Shown here: positions 13,501 to 48,757 of the stretch, in pieces
Position numbering within the stretch: the stretch's first letter is position 1
Layout of the letters: each line of letters begins with the position of its first letter
Virus record (IMG/VR): IMGVR_UViG_3300042317_001568
Coordinates: 62,001 to 126,000 of that record
Strand: one strand, 5' to 3'
Length of the DNA stretch: 64,000 nt
Program-made: the position numbers and the translations under genes
Notes under the pieces: generated by a model
Database searches by the model: none
What the model was told of the DNA's origin: nothing
What the model saw: the letters and a program-made list of their open reading frames with translations, nothing else

Positions 13501-13792
13501 GATCCGCCGCAACGTCGACTCGATGTCGTACCTGTTCTACCGTCGTCTGCGTCCGTACATCGGCCGCACGAACGCGCAGCCCGGAATGGTTAAGGTGCTA
13601 GAGTTCGAAGTAACGCGCGTCATCGATTTCTTGAAGTCTAACGGCAACACTGCAGAACTCGGCTCGCAGTTAATCAACGGCTCGATCCGCAAGCTGCAGA
13701 TTCATCCGCTGCTGAAGGATCGGATCGAGATTGTTCTTGATCTGGTTGTTCCGGCTCCGCTCAACAACATCGAACTGCACTTAGTGGTCTAA
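10583..13792 (+). CDS. Tail sheath protein (1069 aa, with inserted domains)
   Basis: N-terminal YVKPQVLVFQE; sheath-like C-terminus (PHQPLTN...RRNVD...P.PLNNIEL); followed by a tube-sized gene. Confidence 0.85.
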   Translation: MSSYVKPQVLVFQEFSIVPTEITEPLRAHITGPNGVLHRYSDSDEKQTIRLGAYNQTDDVCYPWPQRKPGSLVDLDYVKLYIDNALLKYYEHNLSDVETTITAVETNQRVLPNWITSDDLSFKSNTAAYPRSTEFNDRDVQLGDVVYLRTVSADNNCEETTLWTSVAGFASDNVPSRIKPAVVDDNNCAGHSATTSSAQVHADGGALDNSVVINAVDGSLYNGLPSGDVEETYTITVVKSSISGCNAARLRVRSASRRDDVAEVTAAAFGSPTTIGTRGLKVTFAVTAGSGDTFLVGQQWTVSVTQSVTATTIASAADGNFTMDGDDILGAYTGDKNDIYVVEVTKGGYWAALPAITVRTVKGLDFSGPTEVTASGVEVGIGTSGVKIVLTSTQGLRKGDKFYVTVVSAKAGEVRKLILRDDLPVAMREKSMLAKKLHTAKLASTANVVSLSGTPTIDGVALQSGDKVLLKNQTNAAQNGLYVVPAASGDPATVGNWTRTTGNDVLIAGSFVRVTHGSTQATKGYLLTNTGTLNLGTTTLTFVNDDDADVLKFPSLDLKLFIKDNIQVSKNRIGYAPMTNYWFEDTQICVQEGIVAYHPEWTDAGAEQPLPVEGGTLYAEYREWVFDLSDEVNAMSDVADLDNIPGQLHPDNPLKWGVYKALANSNGTAVKYTAVHDPKELDSWVQVLERLKGRDDFYNLVPMTFDRMVQNLWAAHIGAESNEYANNWKAGYFALRAETHQLVVGEGARIRGVLAEVMPEAVLATLADDPNATNTQYTLLQVPTGNNNASGYFITNDVRPGDIVRYNYTTDGFGDVQYEEYVVDKVLSENSLLLYTGGDVAVTTPQQFEIWHNRNRNEVADHIAEQAGSLSNRRVCAVWPDQVGEAGTTQPGYYLAAALAGLTSGVVPHQPLTNVEVAGFDDFTRSYKYFNETQLNRMAEAGVWIVTEDRDGTPHTRHALTTDNLDLNRREEMIRRNVDSMSYLFYRRLRPYIGRTNAQPGMVKVLEFEVTRVIDFLKSNGNTAELGSQLINGSIRKLQIHPLLKDRIEIVLDLVVPAPLNNIELHLVV

Positions 13793-28331: not shown

Positions 28332-29987
28332 ATGCCACTAGAAATCACGAAACTAGACGAGTTAGCGCCCGAAAAGGTCGAGGCGATTTTTGCGACGTTC
28401 ACGCAACTAATGCAGGAGCGCCACCCAGAAGTCGAGCTCACCCGCGGAGCGTTTCACGACCTTGTGCTGTATTTCAATAGCGTGCTGGCCGCAGCCGTTC
28501 GAGAAAACATCGATCTCGTACTGCAGAGCAATAGTCTTTGGCAGATCATAAAAAACCCGGCGCTGGCAGAAGTAGAACTCGTTGACCGCGTTTTGTCGAA
28601 CTACAACGTTGTGCGAGACAGTGGCACAGAAGCAACCGGGCTTGTGACAGTTGTGGTTAATCTGCCGGTGCTGACAAACATTGCGGCCGGGGTAATACTC
28701 TCTGCCGACGATATTGAATTTGTGACTACGAACGACTTTGTGCTTATACCGCCAACTGCGCAACCGCGGGACGACAACGACAAAAAGCTCGTTGTTGTTG
28801 GTGACGGCACGTACGCGGCGAACATTACAGTGCAGGCCGTGGAGGTAGGCGCCAGCGGTAACATACCCCGCGGCACGAAACTGATTCCAAATTTCGCTCA
28901 GAACAACGTATTAGAACTTTTTGCTGCGAGCGACTTTATTGCCGGCCGTGACGCGAGCACCAACGAAGAATACTTACAAAAGCTAGCCACTGGTTTGGCC
29001 GCTAAGACAATCGGCGGGCGCAAGAGCTACGAGGCTTTAATACGGGCGCAAAGCAAGTTTGAAAATATGCTGCACTGCTCTGTGCTTGGGTGCGGCGACC
29101 CAGAACAGCAAAGAGACCAGCACGGCCTGTTTCCTATTTCTGGCGGCGGCAAAGTAGACGTATACGTGCAGACAAATTTTACAGGGCAAGAGGTAACAAA
29201 CTTTCTGCCGGCGAAGTACATAGGCCCCGGCGACGTAGGCAGCGTGTGGCAAGTCAACCTTGACCGCGAGATCACACCCGGTTTTTACGACATTGTTCGC
29301 GTTACGACTCCCAGCAAGGACGATGAAGCGCACAAAATCTTAATGGAAGACCGCGGCGCTAATTTAACAGACATCGCATACGTTCCTGACATCAAGTACT
29401 TACATGAGAGCGCATACACGCGCTATCAGTACGCGATCATTCAGTTTGAAGACGAAACCGTGCTGCCAACCACGGAGAATAACCTTATCCCGAACGTGAC
29501 GACGGCGCAGTACGCAGTCACTACACGCAGCATGCCGCTTGTCGCCGAGATTCATGACTTTTTAACGTCTCGTGACACGCGGGCGCGGGGCACAGACATT
29601 CTGGTAAAAGCGGCTGTACCGTGTTTCACCAGAATATCGTTTACGATTCAAACGGAAGCCAGCGAGCCCGTCTTAGATTCGACAATCGCTGAAATCAAAC
29701 TAGCTATTGTAAAAGCTATCGGCAATATTGGTTTTGGCGGACAACTGCATTCGTCGATTATTAGCGGCGCCGCGCACAAGTATCTCAGCGGCCGACAAGC
29801 GATTCGCGAGATTGATATGTTTGGAAAAATTCACCGCCCTGACGGCACGATTGCTTACCTGCGAGACAATACGCTGCTCACAATACCTAACGACCCGCAA
29901 CGCTTGGTCACCGGGAGAACTACCGCGTTTCTCGTCGGCGTAGCGGATATCGCCATAACAACAGCCACCGCCGGCTTTACCGACTAA
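28332..29987 (+). CDS. Baseplate J-like wedge protein
   Basis: R..G..ATG.V; V.A...G..GNI..G; G.DA.TNEE patterns. Confidence 0.8.
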   Translation: MPLEITKLDELAPEKVEAIFATFTQLMQERHPEVELTRGAFHDLVLYFNSVLAAAVRENIDLVLQSNSLWQIIKNPALAEVELVDRVLSNYNVVRDSGTEATGLVTVVVNLPVLTNIAAGVILSADDIEFVTTNDFVLIPPTAQPRDDNDKKLVVVGDGTYAANITVQAVEVGASGNIPRGTKLIPNFAQNNVLELFAASDFIAGRDASTNEEYLQKLATGLAAKTIGGRKSYEALIRAQSKFENMLHCSVLGCGDPEQQRDQHGLFPISGGGKVDVYVQTNFTGQEVTNFLPAKYIGPGDVGSVWQVNLDREITPGFYDIVRVTTPSKDDEAHKILMEDRGANLTDIAYVPDIKYLHESAYTRYQYAIIQFEDETVLPTTENNLIPNVTTAQYAVTTRSMPLVAEIHDFLTSRDTRARGTDILVKAAVPCFTRISFTIQTEASEPVLDSTIAEIKLAIVKAIGNIGFGGQLHSSIISGAAHKYLSGRQAIREIDMFGKIHRPDGTIAYLRDNTLLTIPNDPQRLVTGRTTAFLVGVADIAITTATAGFTD

Positions 29988-34280: not shown

Positions 34281-35228
34281 ATGCCTATTGGAAATTGGAA
34301 TCTACAGTGGCTAAATCATAACTCGCAGCGGGCTTACCCACTGACTGAGCGCGCTTCCAAAGTAGACACCAGTAGCGTAATCACGATCCCCGACAGTTTC
34401 ATCGTAGAGCTCTACCTGCCAATCCACTCTGGTACGACTTTTACGCCGGCTGGTTTCTTCATCAAGTCGCTGTTGATCTCGCCGACCGGGTTTAACATCG
34501 TTGTCGGCTACTCTGACGGCACAAACACTGTAGACGTAGCCGCCACAAACATTGCGCGTAGCTCGTTCATCGCTAACCGGGCGTACGCACTGATCGGTAT
34601 TGATAACTTTTACGATTCAGTGGGCTACATCGTAATTGGCAACCTCGACGAGATCGATCTGCTGCCGTCGGGGCTGTACACGTTTACCAGCGCGTCTGCT
34701 GAACTAGAGCCGGGCGCAATCCGCCCGATGCTGCGCGCTGTGTCACGCCTGCAGGTTATCAACAATACCGAAACAAGCGCGCCTATTTACGGCGACGTAA
34801 CGCTTGTGGCTGGGCCTAACGTACGGCTAAACGTAATAACTTCCGGCGCAGAAACTCAAATCGTGTTTCAGGCGATCTCGGGTGAAAACCTCAATCAAAA
34901 CTGTCTCTGCCAGATTCCGGACACGGCTGACTGCATTACCAGCATAAACGGACAGACGGGCATAAACGGCAACTTCGAGATTGCGCCAAATGACTGCATT
35001 GAAATAGAAACGATCGCGGGTGGTATTAAAATCAGCGACATCTGCGCGCAACCGTGCTGCGGCTGCTCAGAGCTAAACGCGGTGTTGTCGCAAATCGATC
35101 GCTTCGGCGACGGTATTACTACGCTGCAAAACTTCGTGACACGGCTTGGTTCCGAAGTAACTCAGATGAGTCTAGTTGTGCTCGGCAGTCGCCTGAGCAG
35201 CTCTGGATGCGACACAACTACGGGGTGA
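34281..35228 (+). CDS. Cys-rich tail protein, paralog family member 1
   Basis: N..RAYPL, ING..GN and CxxPCCxC followed by a coiled coil. Confidence 0.55.
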   Translation: MPIGNWNLQWLNHNSQRAYPLTERASKVDTSSVITIPDSFIVELYLPIHSGTTFTPAGFFIKSLLISPTGFNIVVGYSDGTNTVDVAATNIARSSFIANRAYALIGIDNFYDSVGYIVIGNLDEIDLLPSGLYTFTSASAELEPGAIRPMLRAVSRLQVINNTETSAPIYGDVTLVAGPNVRLNVITSGAETQIVFQAISGENLNQNCLCQIPDTADCITSINGQTGINGNFEIAPNDCIEIETIAGGIKISDICAQPCCGCSELNAVLSQIDRFGDGITTLQNFVTRLGSEVTQMSLVVLGSRLSSSGCDTTTG

Positions 35229-35232
35229 CGCG

Positions 35233-37683
35233 ATGGCATGCGGAAACAGCGTCACATCCGACTACATTAAAAATTTGCTGGTCGGCAAAAATTTTAAATC
35301 GCGCTATTTCGACGGCGTGCAGGCGAACGGTCTTTATGGCTTAGACCTGTTTCTCAACTTTTATGAAAACAACGTCAACCGCGCCGGCGGCGAAACCGAT
35401 TTAAACGCGACCGCTAATTTTGTACGCAATCCAAATTGCTGGGCGTACGACATCGATTTAACGTGCTGTTCGCCGTGGAACATGCATCCGACGCTGCGCC
35501 TTGCCGGCGGCATTCTGCCGTCGAGCAGCCACCATATGGCGGGCACGCTCATCAGTCCGCGACACGTAATTTTTTGCCAACACGACGATTTTTATCCGCC
35601 AGCTGGGAGTCTTATTCGGTTTGTCACAAGAGACAACCAAACTGTGACAAAAACAATAACAGCCGTGCAGGAATCAGCCGCCGGCGACTTTACGGTAGGC
35701 GTGTTAGACAGCGATGTCCCGCCGACAATAACGTTCGCGCGAATTCTCCCAGACAACTGGAGAGAAAAGTTTGCGATGAATTACAACGACAGCGATTTTG
35801 CTGAAGAGTTACTGGGAATATCGCTGAACCAAGACAAGAGCGTATTGTTACGCCGTGTACAAATACCGCCACAAGTACCAAACGAGATAGTGGTTGATGT
35901 TCTTGGTTCGGGTCTTGGGCCGGCTGACGCTATGCGCGGTATTAGAAAGTACGATTCCGGCAGCCCCACTTTTTTGATCGTAGACAACACGCCAATCATT
36001 GTAACTACCTTTTTTACCGCGAATAGTGGCGAGTCAATTTACGCATGTCGGCACGCCATAAACGACGCTATGTTGTCGCTCGGTGGCGGTTACACGCTGA
36101 CGCCGGCTAACTTAAACGCTTACAGCACTTTCTTGTCGTCAGAACGCGGCAGAGCTGGCGTGGGCGTAGTGCAACCGCAAAGCGGCCTCGATTATCCGCT
36201 CGTAGCGCCGACAGACGAGGTGCGTTACCTCATCGCTGACTTTGAATTAAGTTTCGATGACCTCGGCGAATACGGGGCGGGCCCCAAAGTAGTGCCGCCG
36301 CTTAAAATAAAACATCTGTACAACGTTGGCTGCGTGGATTACGGACGGCCCGACGGATTTCCAACGCCACGAGACGCCGCTAAAGCAGATATTCAAATCG
36401 TAGATTCTGCTGGCACGGTAGTGTTCGACACTTTTGCCGGCGGGACCGCTGACAGCATCAAAGAATGGGGCGCTGATTATACGCTGTATAGCTGGAAAAA
36501 GAGCAATCAGGTTTGTTCTCTTTTGGCTTACAAAACATGGCAACCAGACGCCTTCAAAAACGGCGAAGGGCCGAGACGTCGAAATTACGACAAATATCTG
36601 ACACCAGTAAACGCGCAGATTGACTCTCGCGCTGTTTACAAAATGCCAAAAAGACTGCGCAGTCTGTCTGTAAAGAGTAGCCCAAACTGCGCCGCGGTCT
36701 GCGGGCCGTACACCGGGCGAATCAGCTTTAAAAACGGATTCAATACGACAATTGCAGCGGGTGATTCAACAATCAACAATTTTCGTGTAAACACGGCTAT
36801 TACATTTAGCGCTATTGCCGGAAGTGGCGCCGGGAAGTATTCAAGCTGCCCGGACACGTCAATCGTCGCACAATCGATTACTAAGATTAATGGCGCTGCT
36901 GCTCCCGGCGGCGACTTTGTTATTGCTGCCACTGACTGCCTTTGGGCAAAAAAACCGACGACTCGTCCAGCAGGTGCTGCGTACGTTATTCCATCACCCA
37001 CCGTGCCGCAGCAGCTTGGCGGAAACTGCGGGCCGTGCTGCGAGTGCAACGACTACGCTGCGGTGGCAGAAGAGATAAACCGTGTTCAGGCGTTCTACGT
37101 GCAGATTGGCGACCGAGTTAACAATGTAAAATTCCAGCACGAAGCAAATATTGAACGCTGGCTCGCGCAACAATCATGCAGCATCAATCCGCTGAAACTT
37201 CTTTTGGTCCCGCAGCGATGCCCGTACATGGACGTTGTGGCGATGATCTGCAATCCGTGTCAAGAATGCATAAACAACAGCTTAATCACTGTCTCACTTA
37301 CACCGCGAGAGGTAGTAGCGTCAGCGGAAGTTGTCGCCGGTAAGACGGCCATGTACGCAAAAGGTGTAAACGGCCGGCCGGTTGCAATTACAAAAACAAC
37401 AACTGTCAATCAGCAGACCGGCCGAATTACAACACAATTTTCTGCGCCGTTTAATCAAATCACTGCTGGCGCAAATGCATACCTGCAGTTCCGCGTAAAA
37501 TTCTCTGTAAAAAGTCCGTACACGATCGACGGCGCGTTAACAGCAGTCGAAATTGCGACGGGGCAGCGTATCCGCACCGGTTGCGCAGACAGCCCGGCAA
37601 CCGTCACCCGTGTTGACGCCACGGCAATAAAATCAGAGGCGCTATTCTGCACAACCGACGGCAAAACAGTATTCCCGGTATAA
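35233..37683 (+). CDS. Tail protein with N-terminal trypsin-like serine protease domain
   Basis: GTLISPRHVIFCQH (His), GDFTVG (Asp), YDSGSP (Ser); the remainder resembles the paralog family. Confidence 0.65.
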   Translation: MACGNSVTSDYIKNLLVGKNFKSRYFDGVQANGLYGLDLFLNFYENNVNRAGGETDLNATANFVRNPNCWAYDIDLTCCSPWNMHPTLRLAGGILPSSSHHMAGTLISPRHVIFCQHDDFYPPAGSLIRFVTRDNQTVTKTITAVQESAAGDFTVGVLDSDVPPTITFARILPDNWREKFAMNYNDSDFAEELLGISLNQDKSVLLRRVQIPPQVPNEIVVDVLGSGLGPADAMRGIRKYDSGSPTFLIVDNTPIIVTTFFTANSGESIYACRHAINDAMLSLGGGYTLTPANLNAYSTFLSSERGRAGVGVVQPQSGLDYPLVAPTDEVRYLIADFELSFDDLGEYGAGPKVVPPLKIKHLYNVGCVDYGRPDGFPTPRDAAKADIQIVDSAGTVVFDTFAGGTADSIKEWGADYTLYSWKKSNQVCSLLAYKTWQPDAFKNGEGPRRRNYDKYLTPVNAQIDSRAVYKMPKRLRSLSVKSSPNCAAVCGPYTGRISFKNGFNTTIAAGDSTINNFRVNTAITFSAIAGSGAGKYSSCPDTSIVAQSITKINGAAAPGGDFVIAATDCLWAKKPTTRPAGAAYVIPSPTVPQQLGGNCGPCCECNDYAAVAEEINRVQAFYVQIGDRVNNVKFQHEANIERWLAQQSCSINPLKLLLVPQRCPYMDVVAMICNPCQECINNSLITVSLTPREVVASAEVVAGKTAMYAKGVNGRPVAITKTTTVNQQTGRITTQFSAPFNQITAGANAYLQFRVKFSVKSPYTIDGALTAVEIATGQRIRTGCADSPATVTRVDATAIKSEALFCTTDGKTVFPV

Positions 37684-37686
37684 GTC

Positions 37687-39447
37687 ATGAGCGTAAGAAA
37701 TCTTAACTGGTACAACCTGCAGTCGACTCGGGAATACCCGCTCGACGACTTGGCGACGTCAGAAACAGACGAGCATGTTGCTATGCCTAGCAACCTGTTA
37801 GTAGACGCACATATACGTTTTCCAGAAACACTCGGAAAATACGCGTACGTGCAGGGAGCCACATCTGCCCCGGGAATTGTGACGATTCTAATAGGCGTGT
37901 CTGAAAACCCAACCACAGAAGGCATGACCGTCGCGGCCGTGCGAGCCCCGCGCCCAGTCAGCCCATATGTGAACTACGACATCACAGCTATTGTTCCCGG
38001 AGTAGCCGGCTGGATCACTTTTGGTCCGGGCATAGAAGAAATGTTTGCAGGGCGTTTTTCGTCGCCAAGACAAACGTTGATTAATGCGCGGTGTGCGCGT
38101 GCGTACAAACCACTGCCGATCCCCAGTATCAGTAAAACTGGTTTAAATACCACGCTGTCCGGCATTGTAAAAATAATTGGTGAGCCGCCGATAGAAGCGG
38201 TGTTTCATTCTTCGTTAGCGGTGGCCGGTAAAACAGCGCAAGCAATCGTCTTGCGATTAAGCAAAGATGACGCGTCACTTAGTTACAACCCGTTTACGTA
38301 TTTTACTGGTTCTTGCGGGCAACGACCCGAGAGCGGAACGTGCCCTAAAACACCAATTGAAACTATTAACGGCGTATCGCCCGACTGTCACGGAAACATC
38401 AATATTGTTTTTGGCGGACCGTTGACAGCGTTACCATTTCAAAATTGCGGCGGTATTGACGTTTTGACACCAACCACGTTAGCGCAAGTGTGCACGAGTA
38501 CCAACACACGGCGCGCGTCATTTAAAGACCTCTGCTGCCCAGACGTCGTGGAGACGCTGAGCGCGCTTTACGCTATCACTGAATTTGTACAAGGAAAAGT
38601 AGTGCAGGTTCAAAGCGACCCAGTGACTTATTACAAAGCAGTTAGTCAAACTAGCGGCACAATTAACTGGGAGCCGACAACAGCCGTAGACGCTATTTGC
38701 GGCTGGCCAGACCCAACAGACGCTATACCTGCAACCACGTTTACCCTCACCGCCATGCAAGACTATCCGTGCTTAAATCTGCCGGCCTGCATTGATTTTT
38801 GTTCTTGCGGCGACGAACCGCCACTATTTGAAACGCGGCGCGGGTCGTTCAAAAAACTCAACACGCAAGCGCCGTTTGGCTGCGTCCCGTGTGGCACTGG
38901 GCAAGAAGCCGCGCCGAGCGAAGATCAAACGATTAAAACAGCGCGGAACACGTACGCGGCGGTAAACAGCAGTTCGACAAGCATCGCAACGCTTAAAAAT
39001 TGCGCGACAGACTGGGCCTATAACAAAACAATTAGCGCGCAGTTTAAAATTGGCAGCGAAGGATTAGACCGCAACGGCGGCATAGTCATTAATTATGTGC
39101 ACGACACTGGAAGCGTTCCTCCGCAAGTGAAATACCTTGCGGCAGTGTTGGATGTTAGCCGTGGCGAGCTGCGCCTGTTGCGGTACGTTAACGATAGCTT
39201 TATCGCCGAGGGCTACGCCACGTTTCCGGTGATTACTGGCAACTGGTATGAGATGTCTGTAACGCCTATTTTTACAGGCACTGGCGTAACAATAAAAGTT
39301 GTCGTAAAAGAGCTCGAAACAGCGGCCCGTACGGTAGAATTAATGGTGCCGCTTACATTTGAAAAATACGGTAATCCCACCGGTTTATACGGCTTATTTG
39401 CCAGCAGATCATGGACCTACTTCAATCGTTTTACCGTCAGCGAGTGA
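37687..39447 (+). CDS. Cys-rich tail protein, paralog family; C-terminal lectin/beta-sandwich-like domain
   Basis: NWYN...REYPL; INGVSPDCHGNI; beta-rich C-terminus. Confidence 0.55.
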   Translation: MSVRNLNWYNLQSTREYPLDDLATSETDEHVAMPSNLLVDAHIRFPETLGKYAYVQGATSAPGIVTILIGVSENPTTEGMTVAAVRAPRPVSPYVNYDITAIVPGVAGWITFGPGIEEMFAGRFSSPRQTLINARCARAYKPLPIPSISKTGLNTTLSGIVKIIGEPPIEAVFHSSLAVAGKTAQAIVLRLSKDDASLSYNPFTYFTGSCGQRPESGTCPKTPIETINGVSPDCHGNINIVFGGPLTALPFQNCGGIDVLTPTTLAQVCTSTNTRRASFKDLCCPDVVETLSALYAITEFVQGKVVQVQSDPVTYYKAVSQTSGTINWEPTTAVDAICGWPDPTDAIPATTFTLTAMQDYPCLNLPACIDFCSCGDEPPLFETRRGSFKKLNTQAPFGCVPCGTGQEAAPSEDQTIKTARNTYAAVNSSSTSIATLKNCATDWAYNKTISAQFKIGSEGLDRNGGIVINYVHDTGSVPPQVKYLAAVLDVSRGELRLLRYVNDSFIAEGYATFPVITGNWYEMSVTPIFTGTGVTIKVVVKELETAARTVELMVPLTFEKYGNPTGLYGLFASRSWTYFNRFTVSE

Positions 39448-39450
39448 TCC

Positions 39451-40233
39451 ATGTCAGAGCGCATTTTATTCCCACAGTTCCGCGACGAGCAAAGCGACTC
39501 GCGGTACCCCTTTACGGACGGGTCTAGCCTAAAGCCGGCAGAAATTAGTTTAACGATAGACCCCGCGTGTTTTATCGACGCCACGTTTCATCCAATAGGC
39601 GGCGGGGAGGCGATATTTTTGAGCCGGTTGATTGTGTCAGCGCTGAATTTTGAATTTGTCGTAGAAACCGCGAACCCGAGCGTAATAGTTCGTGGTGTGT
39701 ACGATTGGCGCGAGCCACCAAGCAACGGGATTATGCCGTTTTTTGATCAGTACGACAGGCCCGCCGGTTTAGTGCTTGTAGACAACGAAAAAATGTCACA
39801 GTTTTTGAGTTGGGGTATTGGCACATACACTTTCGGGCAGCGGTCGGCGCAATTTGTAACGACAACTTTTATTCCAGCAAAAGAGCCCGGCGTACGCGCA
39901 ATCCAGTCTGACCGCGAAGATAGTTTTTTAACAGGCGATGTTTGGATAATCGGAGATGCCGGCGTGGTAGTGCGCGCAGAGGGAGACCGCACCATTCGCG
40001 TCGATGTCGTCGGGGTGCCGCTGTACAGGCGCGTAGCTTGTGATGACGCCGCTGCGGCAGCGCCGCCCAAACCGTATTTGAAGACAATCAACGGGTGCGG
40101 TCCCGACGAGTTTGGAAATTTCACAATTACAGCCACAGACAAAAATTTGCCGGCGGGCCGGGACGACACGGTAGTCCGAATTTATCCGACGAACGGCGGA
40201 CTTGTCTTTGAGGCGCTTGGCGGGAGTGTCTAA
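39451..40233 (+). CDS. Tail protein, paralog family
   Basis: SRYPF; INGCGPDEFGNF. Confidence 0.55.
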   Translation: MSERILFPQFRDEQSDSRYPFTDGSSLKPAEISLTIDPACFIDATFHPIGGGEAIFLSRLIVSALNFEFVVETANPSVIVRGVYDWREPPSNGIMPFFDQYDRPAGLVLVDNEKMSQFLSWGIGTYTFGQRSAQFVTTTFIPAKEPGVRAIQSDREDSFLTGDVWIIGDAGVVVRAEGDRTIRVDVVGVPLYRRVACDDAAAAAPPKPYLKTINGCGPDEFGNFTITATDKNLPAGRDDTVVRIYPTNGGLVFEALGGSV

Positions 40234-40235
40234 AC

Positions 40236-41252
40236 ATGTCGCGTCCCGGCTTTTACAACGACAACGAGTACCGCGCCTATCCGTTTATTTACAACTCGGC
40301 TGCGGACGCGTTGCCGACTAACGTTATTGTTGACGCCGGTTTCATTATGGGGTTGGACGCAGATTACGATGAGACGACAGATTACATTTGGTTAGAGCGC
40401 GTGCAGCGTATATGCGTTACCGGGCGCACAGACTTCAAATTTGTGTTTCGGGTCACGGGCGTTTCGCAACCGATTATTTTTGCGCGGGCCGCGCCAAATG
40501 TTGGCACGCCGCCAACTATTGAGTGGGTGACCGAGTACGCCGAATCAGCCGACGACGCCGCGAGCTGCGGAACAGACCCTGTCTGGTCTGGGTTTATGGT
40601 CACCGGCCGCCTAACCGAATTGGCGGCGAGCATGGTGGAACAGTTCGGGGCGCCAAACACAGACAGTGGCGCGGTAACACACGAGTTAGTGTTTGCGAAT
40701 AACGCGTACAGGATTGAACCGGCACGCGTGCAGAATTTACGCAAAGCCTATCTTCGCAGTGTCAGCGTAGGCAATTATCGCCGCGTAACTGTGCCGGTGT
40801 GCAACAACAGCGGCGCAAGCGTTTTGCCGAATAAAACAGTTATCGTAAACAAAGAATGCATGCACGGCAATTTGCTGTTTCGCGAAGGATACAACTGCCA
40901 GATTATTCAAAAGACGCGCAACAACAGTATTAACATCGGCGCAGTAAAGGGCGGCGGCACAGCAGAAGACAGCGCCCTGTGCGAGAACTCGGGCGAAATC
41001 CCCTTTACGCCGAACGAGGAAAAACCGCTAGAGGTCGCGGCGGCAAACGGCAAACCCGAAGTGCGCAGCAAATTTTTGAGCGGCGGGCCTGCGTGCAAAG
41101 ACTTGATATTCACGATTAACGGAATCGGGGGCGGTAATGTAAACTTAATAGGCGGCGTTAACTTCAGCATGCGCGGGCCAGACGAAGGCGAAACAGCCAC
41201 GCTCCACTTGAACATGAATCAGAATATTCAAGGTGGCTGCGATGGTAATTGA
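40236..41252 (+). CDS. Tail protein, paralog family
   Basis: FYNDN.YRAYPF; [10 protein letters not shown]. Confidence 0.55.
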
Positions 41253-44200
41253 CAATTTATTCGCCGGTTCATCGTGCAATATTCGCGAGGTAGAGCGCGT
41301 TAATTTCAGCTTCGTTGCCGACGCTGATTGCCAGATAGCGCCCTTACCGCTGCCAATCTTTGAGTGCGAGTTGCCGCCCGTGCCGCCTGAACCGGACACG
41401 GAAGTCGGCGTAATTTGTCCTGTTTTCGGGCCGGTAGTTGGCGAAATCCGCGTGGGATATCAGCCGCCCACCAACAATTGCTTTATTAAACGCCTTCCCG
41501 AAGCAAAGCTCAGCATAACTAAAACAGCGACAGACCCGTGTAACTACGAACTGGCGCTGGACATCAACGTACCAATCCCGCCGCCGCCGTGCCCGACAAT
41601 TCGCTCTGGGCCTTCGCAGATTGAGGTCGGCTACGATTCTTGCGTATCGCCGCGGGCCGAGCTAATTGTAGACAAAACGATTATTCCGGCGACGTGCACC
41701 ACACCGGAGCGCTGCGAGTTCGATATCGGTTTTGATATAGCCATACCAATTCCGCGCCCGCCATGCCCCGTAATCAGGCGCGGCACATTCACTGTCGATA
41801 CTGGGTTTACAGGTTCGAGCTGTCTGGCCGGCAAAAAAAATTCTTTTAAGGTCACACAGTCAACGATTCCGGGCGACTGTGACACGCCAGAGACGTGCCA
41901 ATACGTCTTCGACCTAGAAATTGTGGTGCCGGTTCCAAAGCAACCGTGTCCAATCTTAAACAGAAAGCAATTCACGGTTTCTTCCGCGTACACATCAGCT
42001 GCGAGCCCGTGCGCGCCCAGTACGTTTTCTATTACCTCTATACCAATTCCGGGAGACAATTGCCGGACAGCAGACACATGCCGCTATGACTTTGAATTAG
42101 CGATTAATGTACCGATACCCCCGCCGCCGTGCCCAGTCATTCGCCGGCGTGTATTTGACGTATCGGTCGGCTACGAAGGCGAAGACTGCGTAGCCGGCGA
42201 CAACTCATTTGAAGTAGTCGCGGACCCGATACCGAGCACGGGCTGTGGCGATCCGGGGCGCTGCGAGTTTGACGTTGATTTAGTTCTAAAGATTCCTATC
42301 CCGAAACCACCGTGTCCAATTCTTAGACAGGTAAGCGACCCGAACGATTTCGTATCTGTTGGATACGACGGCTGTCCGGATGTTGTCGGCAAATCATCGT
42401 ATTTTGCAATTACTCCGGTTACAACAACTACGACCGATGGTTGCAGAACGGTAAAAACGTGCGGCTGGGAAGTCGACCTGCGAATTGTCGTGCCCATCCC
42501 TAAGCCGCCGTGTGTCGTGCTGAGCAAAAGCCCAGACCGCTCGACGTTTGTGTATGTGGGCTACGAAGACTCGCCGTGCGTCAAGGATAAGCAAAGCCAG
42601 TTCAGTATTCGAAAGACCGAGTACAACGACACCGACGGCTGCACCACCGTCAAGCGCTGCGAATGGGAGTTCGACATTGAGATTGTCGTGCCTATCCCCA
42701 AGCCGCCTTGCGTAAATCTTAAGCGCAAGAAAACCGGCAACTTTGTCTACGTTGGCTACGAGGGCTGCACGAATGTCGCGGGCAAGACGTCCTACTTCGC
42801 TATTACGCCCGTAGTGTCGGCACCCACTGCCGGCTGCAATACAGTACCAAAATGCGAATGGGAATTTGACATTGAGATTGTCGTACCGATCCCGAAGCCG
42901 CCGTGTGTCAGTCTTAAACGTAAAACGTCCGGCGACTTTGTTTCCGTCGGCTACGCGGGCTGTGAAAAGGTCGCTGGCAAGACATCGAAATTTGCGATCA
43001 CGCCTGTCATTAGCACTGAGACAGATGGCTGCACTACAGTAAAGAAATGCGAATGGGAATTCGACATCGAGATTGTCGTACCAATCCCCAAACCGCCGTG
43101 CGTAAGCCTAAAGCGCAAAACATCGGGCGATTTCGTTTCCGTCGGCTACGAAGGCTGCGAAAAAGTTGTCGGCAAAACATCCAAGTTTGCGATTACGCCC
43201 GTCATCAGTACTGAGACAGACGGTTGCACTACGGTAAAAAAATGCGAATGGGAGTTCGACATCGAAGTTGTCGTTCCTATTCCTAAACCCCCGTGTGTCA
43301 GCCTTAAGCGCAAAACATCCGGCACGTTTGTGTACGTCGGCTATCAGGGTCAGACGCCAGTCGCGGGGCGCAGTTCGCGCTTTGCAATAACGCCGGTCAC
43401 CACTACAGAAACAGACGGCTGCACGACGGTAAAAAAATGCGAATGGGAATTCGACATTGAGATTGTCGTACCGATCCCTGAGCCGCCATGCGTTACGCTG
43501 AAACGTAAAACCACGGACAACTTTGTCTCCGTCGGCTACGAGGGCTGTGAAAAAGTTGTTGGCAAAACATCGCGCTTCACCATTACGCCTATCACCGGCA
43601 CTACGACGGTCAATGGCGTGACGCTGAAAAAGTGCGAATGGGAATTCGACATTGAGATTGTCGTTCCGATCCCGAAACCGCCATGCGTTAGCCTCAAGCG
43701 CAAGACGTCTGGAGACTTTGTTTCCGTCGGCTACGAAGGTTGTTCGACGGTTGCGGGTAAGTCGTCCAAATTTGCGATTACACAAGTCACGACCACAACG
43801 CAAGATACCTGCAACACGGTAAAGAAGTGCGAATGGGAATTTGACATTGAGATTGTCGTCCCGATCCCGAAGCCGCCGTGCGTAACGCTGACGAACAAAA
43901 AATCTGGCGGGTTCGTGACGGTCGGTTACGAGGGTTCGTCTTGCGTAACCGGCAAATCGAGCAAATTCACTATCACAAAAGTCGCGGCAACTCCGTCTAC
44001 GTCGTGCACCAAGCCAGATGATTGTGAGTGGGAATTCGATATCGACGTCATCGTACCGATACCGAAACCAAAATGCCCGAAGCTGCAGACCAAAGCTACA
44101 AACAAAATCAAGTCGACTTACGAGGACTCACAAACCCCGTTCCCCGGCACAGCTAAGTTTCAGATCATTCCGACCACAAACACGTCGGCGGCATGCAAAA

Positions 44201-47200
44201 CGCCTGACGAGTGCCAGTTTGATTTCGACATTGACATTGATTTTAAGCTTCCTCGCCCACCGTGCCCGCAGATTACTATTCGGCGCCAAACGGTGCGAGC
44301 CGACTACGAAGTGCCGAGCACGCAGCTTTATTTTAATTCGATTACGCAGCATCAGCTGAACACCGGCACCAACCGCCCGCCGCAGTGTATCTTCAATGTT
44401 GACTTTGATCTGCAAATCAAAATACCGAAACCACCGTGCATAAAAATTCAGGTGGGCACAATCGATTTGAGGAAAGTCGATATCGACCGAGAACCGGTGT
44501 TTCGGTTAACGCCGCGCCAGAACTGCAACGCCGGGTACTTCGACAACACGTTCTTAGACTTCACTATTGAGTGGCCGTGGTGCAAGCCGTATTTCGTATA
44601 CGACATATCCGGCAGTTACTCCGGTGGCCCTCCCGAATCGCAGTCTTTAAGCGCAAAATACTACGACCCCGTCGACGGCGATGGCTGTGGCGGCGACGAC
44701 AAAACCAAGCTGTACGTCAAACAAGACCAAAGCGATAAGTGCAAGTTTTGGATATCCGCGGAGACAAAGCTCAACATCGCGTCGAGTGTGTACAAAGTAA
44801 AAGAGGTTGAAATCACTGGGTGTGACACCGACAACTTCGGCTACGGTGGCTACGCAAACGACACCTATTGCGCGATCAGAGAAGTACAGATTGAAGAAGA
44901 GATAAAATCAGGCGGCGCGGGCTGCAATACCTCACCCAAGGTTGTCGAGCAAAAAGTAAAAATTGTAACCAACCCGTTGAAGGCCGGTAAAGTCACGGTT
45001 ACGCCAGACAGTGTCGCCAGCGGTGAATTGTCAATTGTCGACAAAGACACGTACTCTGAGTTAACGCTTACGCTTGATTTCAACACGGTTGAATGCAGCA
45101 GCGGGGCGAGTGCTGGCGGTGGCGGTGGTGGTGGTGGCGGCTACGGCGGCAGCAGCGGAAGCGGCGGAAGTTCTGGCACGGTCTTTTGTTACACCGGCCC
45201 TAGCGGCGCCACGGGTCCCCGCGGTCCGACGGGTCCGTGCGGCCCAACCGGCGCGACAGGACCAACTGGCCCGCGCGGATTCACGGGCGTTACTGGTCCG
45301 CCGGGTCTGACTGGCCCGTCTGGTCCTTCAGGCCCGGCCGGCCCGCTACCGCTCATCAGCGCATTTGTTATGCAGCCGCTTGTAACCCCGCCGGCGCAAC
45401 CATACTTAAACGTCTCGGGTACACCAGAAGCACCAATATTAGAGTTTTATCTGCAGCGCGCACCGTACGTAACCAAAGGAAACGTACAGATTGTCGCGCC
45501 GGACATCGACCCTGATATTACCGCGCAGGGCGGCGGCGCGCAGGGCGACCTAACGCTCGACTTCAAACTACCGCGCGCGGCAAAAATAAATGTAAAACCA
45601 GTCACGGTATTAACGCCAGATACTGTGCCTACAGCTGTCGGGCAACCCAACGCCGGCGACGTAGATTTAACGTTCTCATTACCGCGCGCAGCAACTGTTA
45701 CAAAAGGAGATTTCGAGGTCCTTGATCCCGATCAAGACCCAGAAGTCGATTTCCAGATTCAAGCCGGCGACGTCACCGTTGACTTCAAGCTTCCCAGAGC
45801 AGCCGAGATCAACGTTCAACCAACCACGGTTGTAGCGCCTAACGTCGATCCATCGGTATCACAAACAACCACAGCCGGTGACGTAGATTTGACGTTTAGT
45901 CTGCCGCGGGCGCCAGAGTTTACAGTTGCCGCCACCAATATCGGGGGTGCGGGCGATGACCCTGCTGTAGAGTTAGCGCAAACCGGCGGCGGCGATTACG
46001 AATTTACTTTCACCCTGCCGGGCGCTAAGTCTCTTGCGATTGGTACTACGACGACACTAGACCCCGTAAACGACCCGACTGTTGCGCTTATCGCAAACGG
46101 CGACGACAGCGGCTACGACATTAACTTCTCGTTGCCGCGAGCAATAGCGTTCACGTCAAACTCGTTTGCCATAGACCCGATAGATGACCCGATTGTGATG
46201 GTGAGTACGGACCCGTTCAGCGGCGATAAGCATCTCGGGTTTAATTTACCGCGAGCTCGCCGCGTGGATGTTGGCAACGTGATTTCAATCGGCCTCACCG
46301 GGCCGACAGGTCCAAATAATGCGTACATTTGCTCCGAGCTGGATATCACATGCGCGGCGAAGGTTACCGCCCGAGAAGATACGGCCGGCGACGTATTGCT
46401 CGACTTTGAAATTCCTTTAGGCCCAACCGGCCCGGCGGGACCGTCTGGTCCGACAGGGCCGACAGGACCTACCGGCGCCACAGGCCCGGATGGCCCGCAA
46501 GGTATAGAAGGCCCGCTTGGGCCGACGGGACCGTCTGGTCCGACAGGGCCTACAGGGCCAACTGGAGCTACCGGGGTCGCTGGGCCGCAAGGCGTAGAAG
46601 GGCCTCTCGGGCCGTCTGGTCCGACAGGGCCGACAGGGCCTACAGGGCCTTCAGGGCCACGCGGCTTTCAGGGTGTAACGGGCCTGTCAGGCCCAAGCGG
46701 TCCGAAGGGGCCCACGGGCCCAACGGGCGCTACAGGGCCAGCAGGGCCCTCTGGACCGCGTGGTTTAGGCGAAACAGGGCCGACAGGGCCGACGGGCGCT
46801 ACAGGGCCGAGCGGGCCGCAAGGGCCTATTGGGCCGCAGGGTCCTGAAGGTGTTCAAGGTCCGCAGGGTCCAGAAGGACCGCAAGGTCAAATAGGTAACG
46901 CCGGGCCGCAGGGGGCGCAGGGTCCTCCGGGTGTTCAAGGCGCCGACGGTCCAGAAGGCCCACAAGGACCGCTTGGGCCGTCTGGACCAGCAGGCCCTTC
47001 CGGACCAACTGGCCCGAGCGGCCCATTAGGCCCGACAGGTCCGATAGGTCCTTGCGGACCGCCGGGCTCGCCGGGGCCGCAGGGCGCGACAGGCCCCACA
47101 GGGCCAGCAGGGCCGAGCACATTAACTGAAGCGTTATTGCAACAAATTATTGCGGCTGTAAACACCAACCCCGCACTGCGGCTTGCAATAAAAAACGCAG

Positions 47201-47211
47201 CGCTAGCGTGA
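41233..47211 (+). CDS. Giant fibre protein: ~16 Cys-rich repeats, nine LPRA repeats, two collagen-like G-P-T/S tracts
   Basis: Repeats are directly visible in the translation. Confidence 0.8.
42658..44075 (+). repeat. Coding tandem repeat with a 195-nt (65-aa) period
   Basis: CEWEFDI codons start at 42658, 42853, 43048, 43243, 43438, 43633, 43828 and 44023. Confidence 0.9.
46420..47117 (+). repeat. Collagen-like Gly-X-Y coding repeat (~75 triplets)
   Basis: Uninterrupted or near-uninterrupted [12 protein letters not shown] run. Confidence 0.9.
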
Positions 47212-47649: not shown

Positions 47650-47924
47650 GCCTTAAAGCCAGCCCCAACACATCAAAATTGCTTTACGGAACTAAACCGC
47701 AGGTCCGCGCCGACGGGGATGACGCCGGCGTTGTGACTGTACGCCTCCGCGACGATTGTCACCGCCCCGTCGCTGGTCGAACAGTGGTGCTCACGGCCGA
47801 TCGCGGAGACGTCACAATTCAACAACCCGGGCCGACGAACGCAGAAGGGCTCGCGCTCGGCTACGTGCGTTCAAGTGTTCCGGGACCCGTAAACATTACC
47901 GGCGTTATACAACCACTGACGTAA
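47646..47924 (+). CDS. Stand-alone bacterial Ig-like (Big_1/invasin-type) domain protein
   Basis: ADG.D...VTV.LRD....PV.G..V...TNAEG.A...V.S..PG...IT. Confidence 0.75.
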   Translation: MSLKASPNTSKLLYGTKPQVRADGDDAGVVTVRLRDDCHRPVAGRTVVLTADRGDVTIQQPGPTNAEGLALGYVRSSVPGPVNITGVIQPLT

Positions 47925-47929
47925 TAAAC

Positions 47930-48757
47930 ATGACTACAGAAAACTGCTGCAACAATCAAGATTACCCCGGCGCAATTCAGCTCGATGGCGCGCTGACCTT
48001 GAACTTTTATTCGCCGGAGTTGCCACCGCCGCCGCCAGCTCCGGACAGCGGACGCAATATCCATTTAGTGTGGGAGGTCAGCCGCTACAACTACCACTCG
48101 ACAGACGGTATTCGCGTGCGCATTACAGCCGACAGCGCAACGTTAATGTCGCCCAAAGTGTTCGCGTACCAGTTGCTGCCGCTGAAACCCGGCGATGAAG
48201 AACGCGTAGGAAGCTTTGATCATGTGTGCTCGCCGGTCGACCTAGAGGAGTACCCTGAAGACGAACCCATTGCGAACTCCCGGCCGGCTTGGTTCCGGTT
48301 GAACTATGTAGACGTTCTGCTGCGGTCGCGTGCGGAGGTAAAGGGGTTTGTCCAAGACGTGACAGAAGATGTCCAGCGGCTTAAGCAGACACTGGACACG
48401 ATGGACGATTTACTGCCGGGTGGCGCCATGTGGTTTGGCACACCGCCGGTTGCTCCAGCCGCCCCGACAGGTCTCGTGACCACCGTCGGGAACGCGCGAG
48501 TGACTTTAGGCTGGGCAGCGCCGACAAACAACGGCGGCGCACCGATAACAAATTATCTTGTGCAAAGAACGCTGGCGACCGGCACTCCCAACTGGATAAC
48601 CGTGTCGTCCGCGGCTTCGGTTGCAACAAACCGCATTGTTACCGGTTTGACAAACGGCGTTGGTTACAAATTTCGTGTTGCTGCTGTAAACATCATTGGC
48701 CCCGGGCCGTTTGTAACAACAAGCAACGCTGTCACCCCAGTTCAACCGGCACCATAA
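47930..48757 (+). CDS. Virion protein with C-terminal fibronectin type III domain
   Basis: PAAPTGL...VTLGWAAP..NGGAPITNY...VTGLTNG..YKFRVAAVN. Confidence 0.8.
   Translation: MTTENCCNNQDYPGAIQLDGALTLNFYSPELPPPPPAPDSGRNIHLVWEVSRYNYHSTDGIRVRITADSATLMSPKVFAYQLLPLKPGDEERVGSFDHVCSPVDLEEYPEDEPIANSRPAWFRLNYVDVLLRSRAEVKGFVQDVTEDVQRLKQTLDTMDDLLPGGAMWFGTPPVAPAAPTGLVTTVGNARVTLGWAAPTNNGGAPITNYLVQRTLATGTPNWITVSSAASVATNRIVTGLTNGVGYKFRVAAVNIIGPGPFVTTSNAVTPVQPAP

What the first reader, a model, noticed from the sequence alone, without database searches (positions are those of the whole stretch)
43339..44390. Paired cysteine loss points to inter-repeat disulfides in the giant fibre
Seen: each 65-aa unit normally has four Cys (PPC, GYEGC, DGC, KKC). 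One unit loses the GYEGC Cys (GYQGQ, ~43339-43353) and the next unit loses the DGC Cys (TTVNGV, ~43600-43620). The pattern recurs later: STYEDSQTP lacks the Cys and the next unit's NTGTNRPP lacks it too. Inference: GYEGC of unit n bonds to DGC of unit n+1, stapling the repeats into a disulfide-linked rod.
Basis: partly seen in the sequence, partly recalled or inferred. Interest (0 to 1): 0.62.

Follow-up and report, generated by a model that had tools for sequence, protein, structure and literature searches.

The report
Disulfide-stapled repeats in giant phage fibre
A 1,992-residue tail-fibre protein of an uncultured freshwater jumbo phage carries about 17 cysteine-rich repeats, and in 67 related proteins the second cysteine of each repeat is lost, gained or kept together with the third cysteine of the next repeat, as expected if cross-links staple the repeats into a rigid three-chain rod.

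Summary
In ORF 41233-47211 (+), unit u11 lacks the GYEGC Cys (C2, 43339-43353) and u12 lacks the DGC Cys (C3, 43600-43617). The second case (u15/u16) is the conserved end of the array.

- C2(n) and C3(n+1) are present or absent together: phi 0.83, against 0.25 and 0.14 for the other registers.
- First units lack C3 and last units lack C2.
- Units with two C2-loop Cys are followed by units with two C3-tip Cys.
- When C3(n+1) is lost alone, an extra Cys appears in unit n.
- Units split by an inserted domain obey the predicted Cys parity, 21 of 21.
- Coupling analysis puts the GY loop of unit n next to the hairpin tip of unit n+1 through non-Cys residues too, and pairs C1 with C4 within a unit.

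A three-copy model scored 0.72 (best control 0.00). It is a parallel, in-register trimer in which C1 and the C2 loop lie on one face and the C3 tip and C4 on the opposite face. The staples are therefore probably between chains.

No coordinates were available, so SG-SG distances were not measured, and the bond chemistry is inferred. The repeat has no Pfam, PHROG or PDB relative. I rate it a new variant of disulfide-reinforced phage fibres, of moderate interest.

The parts
41233..47211 (+). Giant fibre gene, 1,992 aa from the GTG at 41233; the likely true start is the ATG at 41242.
   Evidence: Open frame. The Atlas record starts at residue 4. It lies downstream of the tail sheath, a DUF2345-like spike and baseplate J genes.
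41233..41376 (+). N-terminal cap of about 48 aa with three Cys (C15, C33, C45). The same count of three Cys before the array is seen in nearly all homologues.
41377..44418 (+). Array of 16 full Cys-rich beta units (aa 49-1062), 58-66 aa each and 5.7% Cys. Each unit has strands b1 and b2, a GY loop carrying C2, and a b3-b4 hairpin with C3 at its tip.
   Evidence: Repeat HMM hits, AF2 secondary structure, couplings, Cys content.
43276..43470 (+). Unit u11 (aa 682-746), pattern 1011. C2 is replaced in GYQGQ at 43339-43353.
   Evidence: Identical in independent metagenome contigs.
43471..43665 (+). Unit u12 (aa 747-811), pattern 1101. C3 is replaced in TTVNGV at 43600-43617. The u11|u12 junction has no staple and lies 4 units before the terminal 1011 unit.
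44056..44418 (+). Units u15 (1011) and u16 (1001). This is the conserved C-terminal boundary pattern of the array.
   Evidence: the last unit is 1001 in 32 of 67 proteins.
44419..45102 (+). Partial 17th unit plus a conserved post-array beta domain (aa 1063-1290) with about 10 Cys and no recognised fold.
45121..45348 (+). First collagen-like G-X-Y segment (aa 1297-1372, 24 triplets with one break).
   Evidence: Pfam PF01391; triplet count.
45349..46419 (+). Region between the two collagen segments, with seven F-x-L-P-R/G-A repeats spaced about 37-39 aa apart (aa 1444-1675).
46420..47118 (+). Second collagen-like G-X-Y segment (aa 1730-1962, 77 triplets with one break), followed by about 30 C-terminal residues that I expect, untested, to be helical.

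Best explanation
The gene encodes a giant tail fibre of an uncultured freshwater jumbo phage with a contractile tail. Its N-terminal 1,060 residues are about 17 tandem beta units of about 62 aa that assemble as a parallel, in-register homotrimeric rod. Alternate hydrophobic residues of the long b4 strand line the three-fold axis.

Each unit contributes two cysteine pairs.
- C1 (PPC) pairs with C4 (KKC) of the same repeat layer.
- C2 (the GY loop after b2) of unit n pairs with C3 (the tip of the b3-b4 hairpin) of unit n+1.

The C2-C3 bond spans more than one repeat period, so successive staples overlap and lock every repeat junction. In the trimer model, C1 and C2 sit on one face of a chain, while C3 and C4 sit on the face that meets the next chain. 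Both bonds are therefore most likely inter-chain. Once oxidised outside the cell, the rod would be a covalently cross-linked three-chain rod.

Where one partner is lost, so is the other (u11/u12, u15/u16), or a new Cys appears to take its place.

What is shown: the co-variation, the register, the boundary behaviour, the parity rule, and the confidence of the trimer model.
What is inferred: that the partners form S-S bonds in the virion (about 0.75), that the bonds are inter-chain (about 0.55), and that oxidation happens after lysis in oxic lake water.
For: Co-occurrence:
- C2(n) vs C3(n+1) co-occur with phi 0.83 and odds ratio 263 over 747 unit pairs. Other registers give phi 0.14-0.25.
- Internal units only: 13 co-losses at shift +1 and 1-3 at other shifts; 0 of 5,000 permutations reach 13.
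- 43 of 67 first units lack a C3-zone Cys (35 read 1101) and 32 of 67 last units are 1001.

Gains, compensation and parity:
- Eleven junctions have two Cys in the C2 loop followed by two at the C3 tip ('IPCTC').
- All 14 cases with C2 kept and C3(n+1) lost have an extra Cys in unit n, most often at HMM column 61.
- In insert-bearing units, the Cys count between C1 and C3 is odd exactly when the next unit has C3: 21 of 21.
- The general parity rule holds for 161 of 197 atypical pairs, against 91 of 267 and 100 of 302 for the other registers.

Coupling analysis (mean-field DCA):
- C7-C52 (C1-C4) ranks 3rd.
- The top inter-unit pairs are D23(n)-R4(n+1) at rank 1, Y21(n)-P5(n+1) and Y21(n)-P49(n+1).
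- C26/C24/column 28 (n) with C46(n+1) rank 76, 160 and 151 of 7,140. Same-unit C2-C3 shows no signal.

Models:
- AF2 of four units gives pLDDT 87, all beta.
- Three copies give ipSAE 0.72 in all three runs, best control 0.00, about 380 contacts, pLDDT 80-82, and at least 91% contact agreement between runs. That mark was reached by 20 of 30 solved homo-pairs and 1 of 23 single chains, and these counts hold only roughly because my own alignment and three copies were used.
- In its interface lists, the C2 loops of u10-u12 are present but not that of u13, and the C3 tips of u11-u13 are present but not that of u10. C1 and C4 lie on opposite faces.

Context:
- Collagen segments in the same chain imply a trimer.
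- The phage comes from lake water.
- Solved phages Milano and Pam3 show that virion tail and fibre disulfides exist.
Against: - No coordinates were available, so no SG-SG distance was measured, and no experiment shows an S-S bond.
- Phage proteins fold in a reducing cytoplasm. No Erv1-type oxidase or DsbA was found in the genome, although the Erv1 control rang nowhere, so that result is uninformative.
- Many homologues share ancestry. The internal co-loss sits at a conserved place, mostly 4 units before the terminal 1011 unit, so the number of independent events is much smaller than the raw counts.
- 36 of 197 atypical junctions break the simple parity rule.
- Whole-protein Cys counts are not preferentially even: 39 even, 28 odd.
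- The monomer AF2 model is also confident, so an intra-chain version of the same pairing is not excluded.
- The trimer score is a model's own confidence, obtained with my own alignment of sliding repeat windows.
Confidence: 0.7

Rival explanations
1. The C2(n)-C3(n+1) and C1-C4 pairing is right, but both bonds lie within one chain. Each chain would form its own stapled rod, and the three rods would be held together only by the collagen segments or by non-covalent packing.
For: The monomer AF2 model of four units is confident (pLDDT 87) with a continuous b4 strand across unit borders. DCA contacts cannot tell intra-chain from inter-chain.
Against: Alternate hydrophobic b4 residues (59, 61, 63, 65, 67 and so on) meet their own copies on the axis of the trimer model and would be exposed in a monomer. 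The interface lists put b1, b2, C1 and the C2 loop on one face and b3, the C3 tip and C4 on the face that meets another chain.
Confidence: 0.25
2. The cysteines are metal ligands (structural Zn or Fe sites between repeats), not disulfide partners.
For: Four Cys per unit resembles a Cys4 site. From my own knowledge, some phage fibres bind metals on their axis, for example the T4 gp37 tip and gp12.
Against: The Cys are lost and gained strictly in twos, while C1 and C4 stay. P0056 has about 20 consecutive units with only C1 and C4. Single losses are compensated by one new Cys at another position. The Cys are not among the axis residues of the trimer model.
Confidence: 0.04
3. The cysteines are conserved neighbours but stay reduced in the virion. 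The co-variation would reflect packing of two thiols, not a covalent bond.
For: Assembly takes place in a reducing cytoplasm, and no dedicated oxidase was found.
Against: Parity conservation, compensation by a Cys at a different position, and doubled staples are typical of disulfides and are not explained by packing. The virions live in oxic lake water. Disulfide networks have been solved in the freshwater phage Pam3 and in Milano.
Confidence: 0.1
4. The paired loss is an accident of shared ancestry or of one recombination tract, with no structural meaning.
For: The internal co-loss sits at a conserved position in related proteins, so it could stem from a few ancestral events.
Against: Independent kinds of evidence agree: the array boundaries, the paired gains, the compensating Cys, the parity of insert-bearing units in other positions and lineages, and non-Cys couplings between the same two loops. 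In the P0001 lineage the 1011 unit is 97% identical, outside the Cys zones, to a 1111 unit of the same protein and is unlike the 1011 units of other clades.
Confidence: 0.03

Closest known systems
Disulfide network of Agrobacterium phage Milano, including its trimeric short tail fibre gp31 (PMC10811340)
   Same: It is a contractile-tail phage whose tail, baseplate and fibre proteins are covalently cross-linked by disulfides seen in cryo-EM. The fibre gp31 has several Cys-Cys pairs along its shaft.
   Different: In Milano the Cys pairs are individual sites in non-repetitive domains. Here one 62-aa unit of unknown fold repeats 16-26 times with a fixed two-pair pattern, one pair reaching into the next repeat. 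There is no sequence or fold similarity.
Freshwater cyanophage Pam3 tail fibres, attached to the baseplate wedge by disulfides (PMC9942802)
   Same: It is a freshwater myophage with trimeric fibres. Its Cys-mediated covalent links were verified by mass spectrometry and DTT treatment. The three conserved N-terminal Cys here could play a similar anchoring role, but that is speculation.
   Different: The Pam3 disulfides join fibre to wedge and do not form a ladder along the shaft. The Pam3 fibre is short and built on helices and glycine-rich motifs.
Trimeric beta-structured fibre shafts (triple beta-helix or beta-spiral of T4 gp5C/gp12, adenovirus and reovirus fibres)
   Same: Parallel in-register homotrimer, repeating short beta units, and hydrophobic residues on the three-fold axis (for this protein; my own knowledge for the known shafts).
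   Different: No structural match was found to any solved chain: Foldseek gave no hit at E <= 0.001 and the best VIA Z was 2.5. The unit is much longer (62 aa) and carries two conserved cystines. The known shafts are held together without disulfides.
Collagen-like phage tail fibres (Pfam PF01391; PHROGs 5073, 6320, 819)
   Same: The C-terminal third of the protein has two G-X-Y segments (24 and 77 triplets) that hit these families strongly.
   Different: Those hits cover only the collagen parts. The Cys-repeat array, which is the subject of the finding, matches none of them.
Staphylococcal SasG/Aap G5-E repeat rods
   Same: Long, thin rods built from tandem flat beta units with continuous strands across unit borders. 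This was the best, though weak, structural hit.
   Different: Z is only 2.5 (rmsd 5.7 A over 92 residues), which is not evidence of a shared fold. Those rods are monomeric, free of disulfides and bacterial.

Membership tests
Collagen triple helix repeat (PF01391) | Uninterrupted G-X-Y triplets rich in Pro/Thr | tested here: met
   E = 5.4e-33 and 113 bits against a cut-off of 27.2. Runs of 7+17 and 39+38 triplets. This applies only to aa 1297-1372 and 1730-1962, not to the Cys repeats.
Any curated family for the 62-aa Cys unit (Pfam-A, PHROGs, PDB sequences) | A significant profile match over the repeat region, aa 49-1062 | tested here: not met
   Pfam and PHROGs hit only the collagen parts. 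A profile of 146 four-unit windows found no PDB chain at E <= 1. tblastn against 50,697 phage records found nothing.
Disulfide-cross-linked phage tail or fibre assemblies (Milano/Pam3 type) | Cys pairs positioned across subunit interfaces | tested here: inconclusive
   In the trimer model, C1 and the C2 loop lie on one interface face and the C3 tip and C4 on the other. Pair-level distances were not available.
Disulfide-cross-linked phage tail or fibre assemblies (Milano/Pam3 type) | S-S bonds present in the virion and sensitive to reduction | not testable with these tools
   This needs virions or recombinant protein, as was done for Milano and Pam3.
Trimeric beta fibre shafts (triple beta-helix or beta-spiral) | Parallel in-register homotrimer with an axial hydrophobic core | tested here: met
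   Model only. ipSAE 0.72 against a best control of 0.00. The same residues of different chains touch (63-63, 65-65, 128-128, 193-193 and others).
Trimeric beta fibre shafts (triple beta-helix or beta-spiral) | Fold similarity to a solved shaft | tested here: not met
   Foldseek against PDB gave no hit at E <= 0.001. VIA wide gave a best Z of 2.5. BFVD and Atlas gave only weak rows. The caveat is that a monomer model of an intertwined trimer is a poor query.
Structural Cys4 metal site | Three or four ligands conserved and lost as a set | tested here: not met
   C2/C3 are lost in twos while C1/C4 stay, and there are about 20 units with only C1/C4 in P0056.

The most novel reading that the evidence does not exclude
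The array is a previously undescribed fibre fold: an intertwined homotrimeric beta rod in which every repeat layer is cross-linked sideways (C1-C4 between chains) and every junction lengthways (C2 of one chain to C3 of the next repeat of another chain). That would give about 90 inter-chain disulfides per fibre.

One junction is deliberately left without a staple, 4 units before the end of the array in 11 of 38 proteins. It would serve as a hinge or a redox-sensitive weak point.
Probability: 0.3. Interest if true: 0.72.

Novelty: new variant of a known kind. Interest (0 to 1): 0.56.

Why it matters
Phage fibres are normally held together without covalent links. A repeat that staples itself to the next repeat, probably across chains, would be a simple modular way to build very long, stiff and protease- or heat-resistant rods.

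- It would explain how a fibre that is roughly 100 nm or longer (a rough estimate of mine) stays straight.
- It defines an unannotated repeat family found in many roughly 200-kb freshwater phages.
- It offers a designable building block for protein nanomaterials.
- The array-end pattern, the parity rule and the conserved staple-free junction give concrete predictions for cryo-EM and mass spectrometry.

Tried and rejected
Structure prediction and complex prediction return scores, secondary structure and interface lists but no coordinates, and no model file reaches the script box.
- Whole-protein Cys parity is uninformative: 39 even, 28 odd.
- Fold searches with the four-unit model gave nothing usable. 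PDB Foldseek returned BamA and POTRA rows with TM about 0.1. VIA wide reached Z <= 2.5. ESM Atlas shape search gave TM <= 0.35. BFVD gave one weak uncharacterised phage protein.
- ESM Atlas feature searches of aa 552-811 and 1104-1285 gave no usable hit.
- The post-array domain (aa 1063-1290) folded with a 14-row alignment to pLDDT 75 and found no fold at Z > 3.4.
- Searches for a phage-encoded oxidase found no Erv1/ALR and no DsbA. The Erv1 control rang in no control genome, so that absence says nothing. A thioredoxin-fold ORF exists, but such genes are common in phages and it is no evidence.
- Laying contigs of four lake runs on 42691-44430 showed no sequence variants at the Cys sites, so natural polymorphism gave no extra test.
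- The large representative-protein search was not used. 66 homologues were enough, and no claim here rests on absence of relatives beyond the Pfam, PHROG and PDB scans.
- A unit-level phylogeny to count independent co-loss events was not built. I only compared nearest-neighbour identities.


Full report
**What is there.** The window is bases 62001-126000 of a 205,010-bp IMG/VR virus record rated 100% complete. The genes around the finding form the tail module of a contractile-tail phage:
- a sheath-like protein at 10583-13792;
- a DUF2345/VgrG-like spike at 14364-17273;
- a baseplate-J protein at 28332-29987;
- a large terminase at 60368-62383 on the minus strand.

The terminase is at most 31% identical to that of any isolated phage. 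Near-identical DNA occurs in runs of 24 lake-water and freshwater studies, 13 of them marked as possible sources of this DNA. This is therefore an uncultured freshwater jumbo phage.

The finding lies in ORF 41233-47211 (+), 1,992 aa. The likely start is the ATG at 41242. Pfam and PHROGs recognise only its collagen-like parts.

**Architecture of the protein.**
- A 48-aa N-terminal cap with three Cys.
- 16 full units and one partial unit of 58-66 aa, rich in Cys (aa 49-1103).
- A conserved beta domain (to about aa 1290).
- A Gly-rich linker.
- Collagen segment 1 (aa 1297-1372).
- Seven F-x-L-P-R-A repeats (aa 1444-1675).
- Collagen segment 2 (aa 1730-1962).
- A short tail of about 30 residues.

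**Checking the observation.** I name the four cysteines of a unit C1 (PPC), C2 (GYEGC), C3 (DGC) and C4 (KKC), and write presence or absence in that order. The units then read:
- u01: 1101
- u02-u10: 1111
- u11: 1011
- u12: 1101
- u13-u14: 1111
- u15: 1011
- u16: 1001

Contigs from four other lake runs cover these sites with no differences. The units are about 80% identical at the DNA level with many synonymous changes, so the protein-level conservation reflects selection.

**Testing the pairing in homologues.** A word search over aa 100-1130 returned 66 homologues of 1,117-3,281 aa, many on contigs of about 200 kb. A repeat HMM (62 match columns; C1 = column 7, C2 = columns 24/26/28, C3 = column 46, C4 = column 52) found 1,065 units.

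Co-occurrence of C2 and C3 in the 747 adjacent full unit pairs:

| Comparison | phi |
|---|---|
| C2(n) vs C3(n+1) | 0.83 |
| C2(n) vs C3(n), first unit of each pair | 0.25 |
| C2(n+1) vs C3(n+1), second unit of each pair | 0.51 |
| C2(n+1) vs C3(n) | 0.14 |

For C2(n) vs C3(n+1), 74 pairs lack both, 646 have both and 27 are discordant (odds ratio 263). The 0.51 for the second units comes largely from the terminal 1001 units.

I then removed the first unit and the last two units of every array, the identical fragment P0002, and P0056. Co-loss still occurs 13 times at shift +1 and only 1-3 times at shifts -2 to +3. No within-array permutation out of 5,000 reaches 13.

Several independent kinds of evidence point the same way.
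1. **Boundary behaviour.** A first unit has no upstream partner, and 43 of 67 first units lack a C3-zone Cys (35 read 1101). A last unit has no downstream partner, and 32 of 67 are 1001, usually preceded by 1011.
2. **Paired gains.** In the P0035/45/54/58/59 clade, a long C2 loop with two Cys is followed by an 'IPCTC' hairpin tip with two Cys.
3. **Compensation.** In the 14 junctions where C2 is kept but C3(n+1) is missing, unit n carries a fifth Cys, most often at column 61 ('I-C-V'). In four junctions of the opposite kind, unit n+1 has a C-C doublet at C4. Four more discordant first-unit junctions are mis-zoned first units.
4. **Insert-bearing units.** In units whose C2 loop is replaced by an inserted domain of 13-223 aa, the number of Cys between C1 and C3 is odd exactly when the next unit has C3: 21 of 21 in the clean set.
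5. **General parity rule.** The rule 'other Cys of unit n = C3 count of unit n+1, modulo 2' holds for 161 of 197 atypical junctions. The other two registers give 91 of 267 and 100 of 302.

**Contacts from co-variation.** I ran mean-field direct-coupling analysis on the two-unit alignment (747 rows, effective number 647). It recovers a coherent topology: b1 parallel to b4, b2 antiparallel to b3, and a b3-b4 hairpin with C3 at its tip. C7-C52 (C1-C4 of the same unit) ranks third.

The strongest inter-unit couplings are not cysteines:
- D23(n)-R4(n+1), rank 1
- Y21(n)-P5(n+1), rank 9
- Y21(n)-P49(n+1), rank 39
- A22(n)-T48(n+1), rank 84

So the GY loop of unit n touches the start of unit n+1 and its hairpin tip. 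The C2 columns 26, 28 and 24 of unit n, paired with C46 of unit n+1, rank 76, 151 and 160 of 7,140. Same-unit and reverse-register pairs show no signal.

**Structure models.** AF2 on aa 617-876 (u10-u13) with 146 four-unit windows gave mean pLDDT 87 and pTM 0.42. The model is all beta, with b4 running on across unit borders.

The same alignment as three copies gave ipSAE 0.72 in each of three runs, against a best control of 0.00. There were about 380 contacts, pLDDT was 80-82, and at least 91% of contacts agreed between runs. That mark was reached by 20 of 30 solved homo-pairs and 1 of 23 single chains. The tool notes that these counts hold only roughly here, because my own alignment and three copies were used.

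The lowest-error contacts are between the same residues of different chains (63-63, 65-65, 128-128, 193-193, 195-195). This means a parallel in-register trimer whose axis is lined by alternate b4 residues.

The interface lists are informative.
- One neighbour touches the scored chain with b1 including C1 (7, 72, 137, 202), b2, and the C2 loops of u10, u11 and u12 (25-28, 91-92, 155-159), but not the C2 loop of u13, which has no next unit in the construct.
- The other neighbour touches it with b3, C4 (55, 120, 185, 250), and the hairpin tips of u11, u12 and u13 (113-115, 180-183, 242-248), but not the tip of u10, which has no previous unit.

In the model, therefore, the C2 loop of unit n of one chain meets the C3 tip of unit n+1 of the next chain, and C1 and C4 also face each other across chains. 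I could not obtain coordinates, so no SG-SG distance is reported.

**Is it a disulfide?** The sequence evidence is of the kind that marks cystines: strict pairwise loss and gain, compensation by a Cys at another position, and parity. A Cys4 metal site does not fit, because C2/C3 vanish while C1/C4 persist. P0056 has about 20 successive 1001 units.

Virions of this phage sit in oxic lake water. Disulfide networks in tails and fibres have been solved for Milano and for the freshwater cyanophage Pam3, where DTT detaches the fibres. No Erv1 or DsbA gene was found, and the thioredoxin-fold ORF is not specific. Oxidation after lysis is my inference.

**A conserved junction without a staple.** In 16 of 38 arrays with the canonical end pattern there is exactly one internal junction that lacks the inter-repeat staple. 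In 11 of these it lies 4 units before the terminal 1011 unit, as u11|u12 does here. Ten arrays lost both Cys. Six kept C2 but re-paired it with a new Cys inside the same unit.

The P0001-lineage 1011 unit is 97% identical, outside the Cys zones, to a 1111 unit of the same protein, and is unlike the 1011 units of other clades. The feature is therefore either maintained by selection or recurrent. A hinge or a docking site is a reasonable guess, but it is untested.

**Comparison with known systems.** The repeat unit has no curated family and no solved or predicted structural relative. The best structural row was SasG E-G5, at Z 2.5. Functionally it belongs with trimeric beta fibre shafts and with disulfide-reinforced phage tails. 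It differs in that the cystines are a periodic, overlapping ladder built into a repeat.

**Verdict.**
- Covalent bonding is likely (about 0.75).
- The inter-chain geometry is a model-based refinement (about 0.55).
- I rate it a new variant of a known kind, of moderate interest.

Noticed in passing
window 43276-43665 (u11|u12) and the homologous junctions in P0003, P0005-P0007, P0009, P0010, P0012, P0016, P0020, P0022, P0035, P0039, P0045, P0055, P0059: Exactly one internal junction lacks the inter-repeat staple in 16 of 38 arrays. In 11 of them it lies 4 units before the terminal 1011 unit. This may be a conserved hinge or docking point in the rod.
   Followed up: partly
homologues P0014, P0015, P0020, P0026, P0027, P0029, P0031, P0050, P0061-P0067: Extra domains of about 13-300 aa are inserted into the C2 loop, between b2 and b3. 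In the P0050/P0061-67 clade nearly every unit carries one. The repeat therefore acts as a scaffold that displays inserted domains while keeping the staple parity.
   Followed up: partly
window 41233-41376: The N-terminal cap has three Cys before the array in almost all homologues, an odd number per chain. By analogy with the Pam3 fibre Cys28 it could make links between fibre chains or from fibre to baseplate.
   Followed up: no
window 44419-45102: A conserved, Cys-rich beta domain follows the array (aa 1063-1290) and is shared by about 12 homologues. AF2 gave pLDDT 75 and no PDB fold above Z 3.4.
   Followed up: yes
window 45349-46419: Seven F-x-L-P-R/G-A repeats, spaced about 37-39 aa apart, sit between the two collagen segments. 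They match no Pfam family.
   Followed up: no
window 45187-45240, 46330-46353 and 47053-47055: There are single Cys inside or beside the collagen helices: C1319, C1336, C1700, C1707 and C1941. They could form inter-chain knots like those at the ends of animal collagens.
   Followed up: no
window 42853-43827 (run X18): One metagenome contig joins 43827 back to 42853, a step of 975 bases, which is exactly five repeat units. This is either repeat-number variation in the population or an assembly artefact of the repeats.
   Followed up: no
window 34281-41252: Four of the five ORFs just upstream of the fibre are unusually Cys-rich (2.4-2.9%; the fifth, 39451-40233, has 1.2%). Only the last four were scanned, and they have no Pfam or PHROG match. 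The disulfide theme may extend to the fibre's neighbours.
   Followed up: no
window 47756-48757: The ORF downstream of the fibre has a C-terminal fibronectin type III domain (E = 1.1e-10) and weak hits to minor-tail PHROGs.
   Followed up: no
L005 (G000:C1:19181-19423, outside the window): The phage genome has a 127-aa thioredoxin-fold ORF (PF00085, 25.3 bits). No Erv1 or DsbA was found.
   Followed up: no
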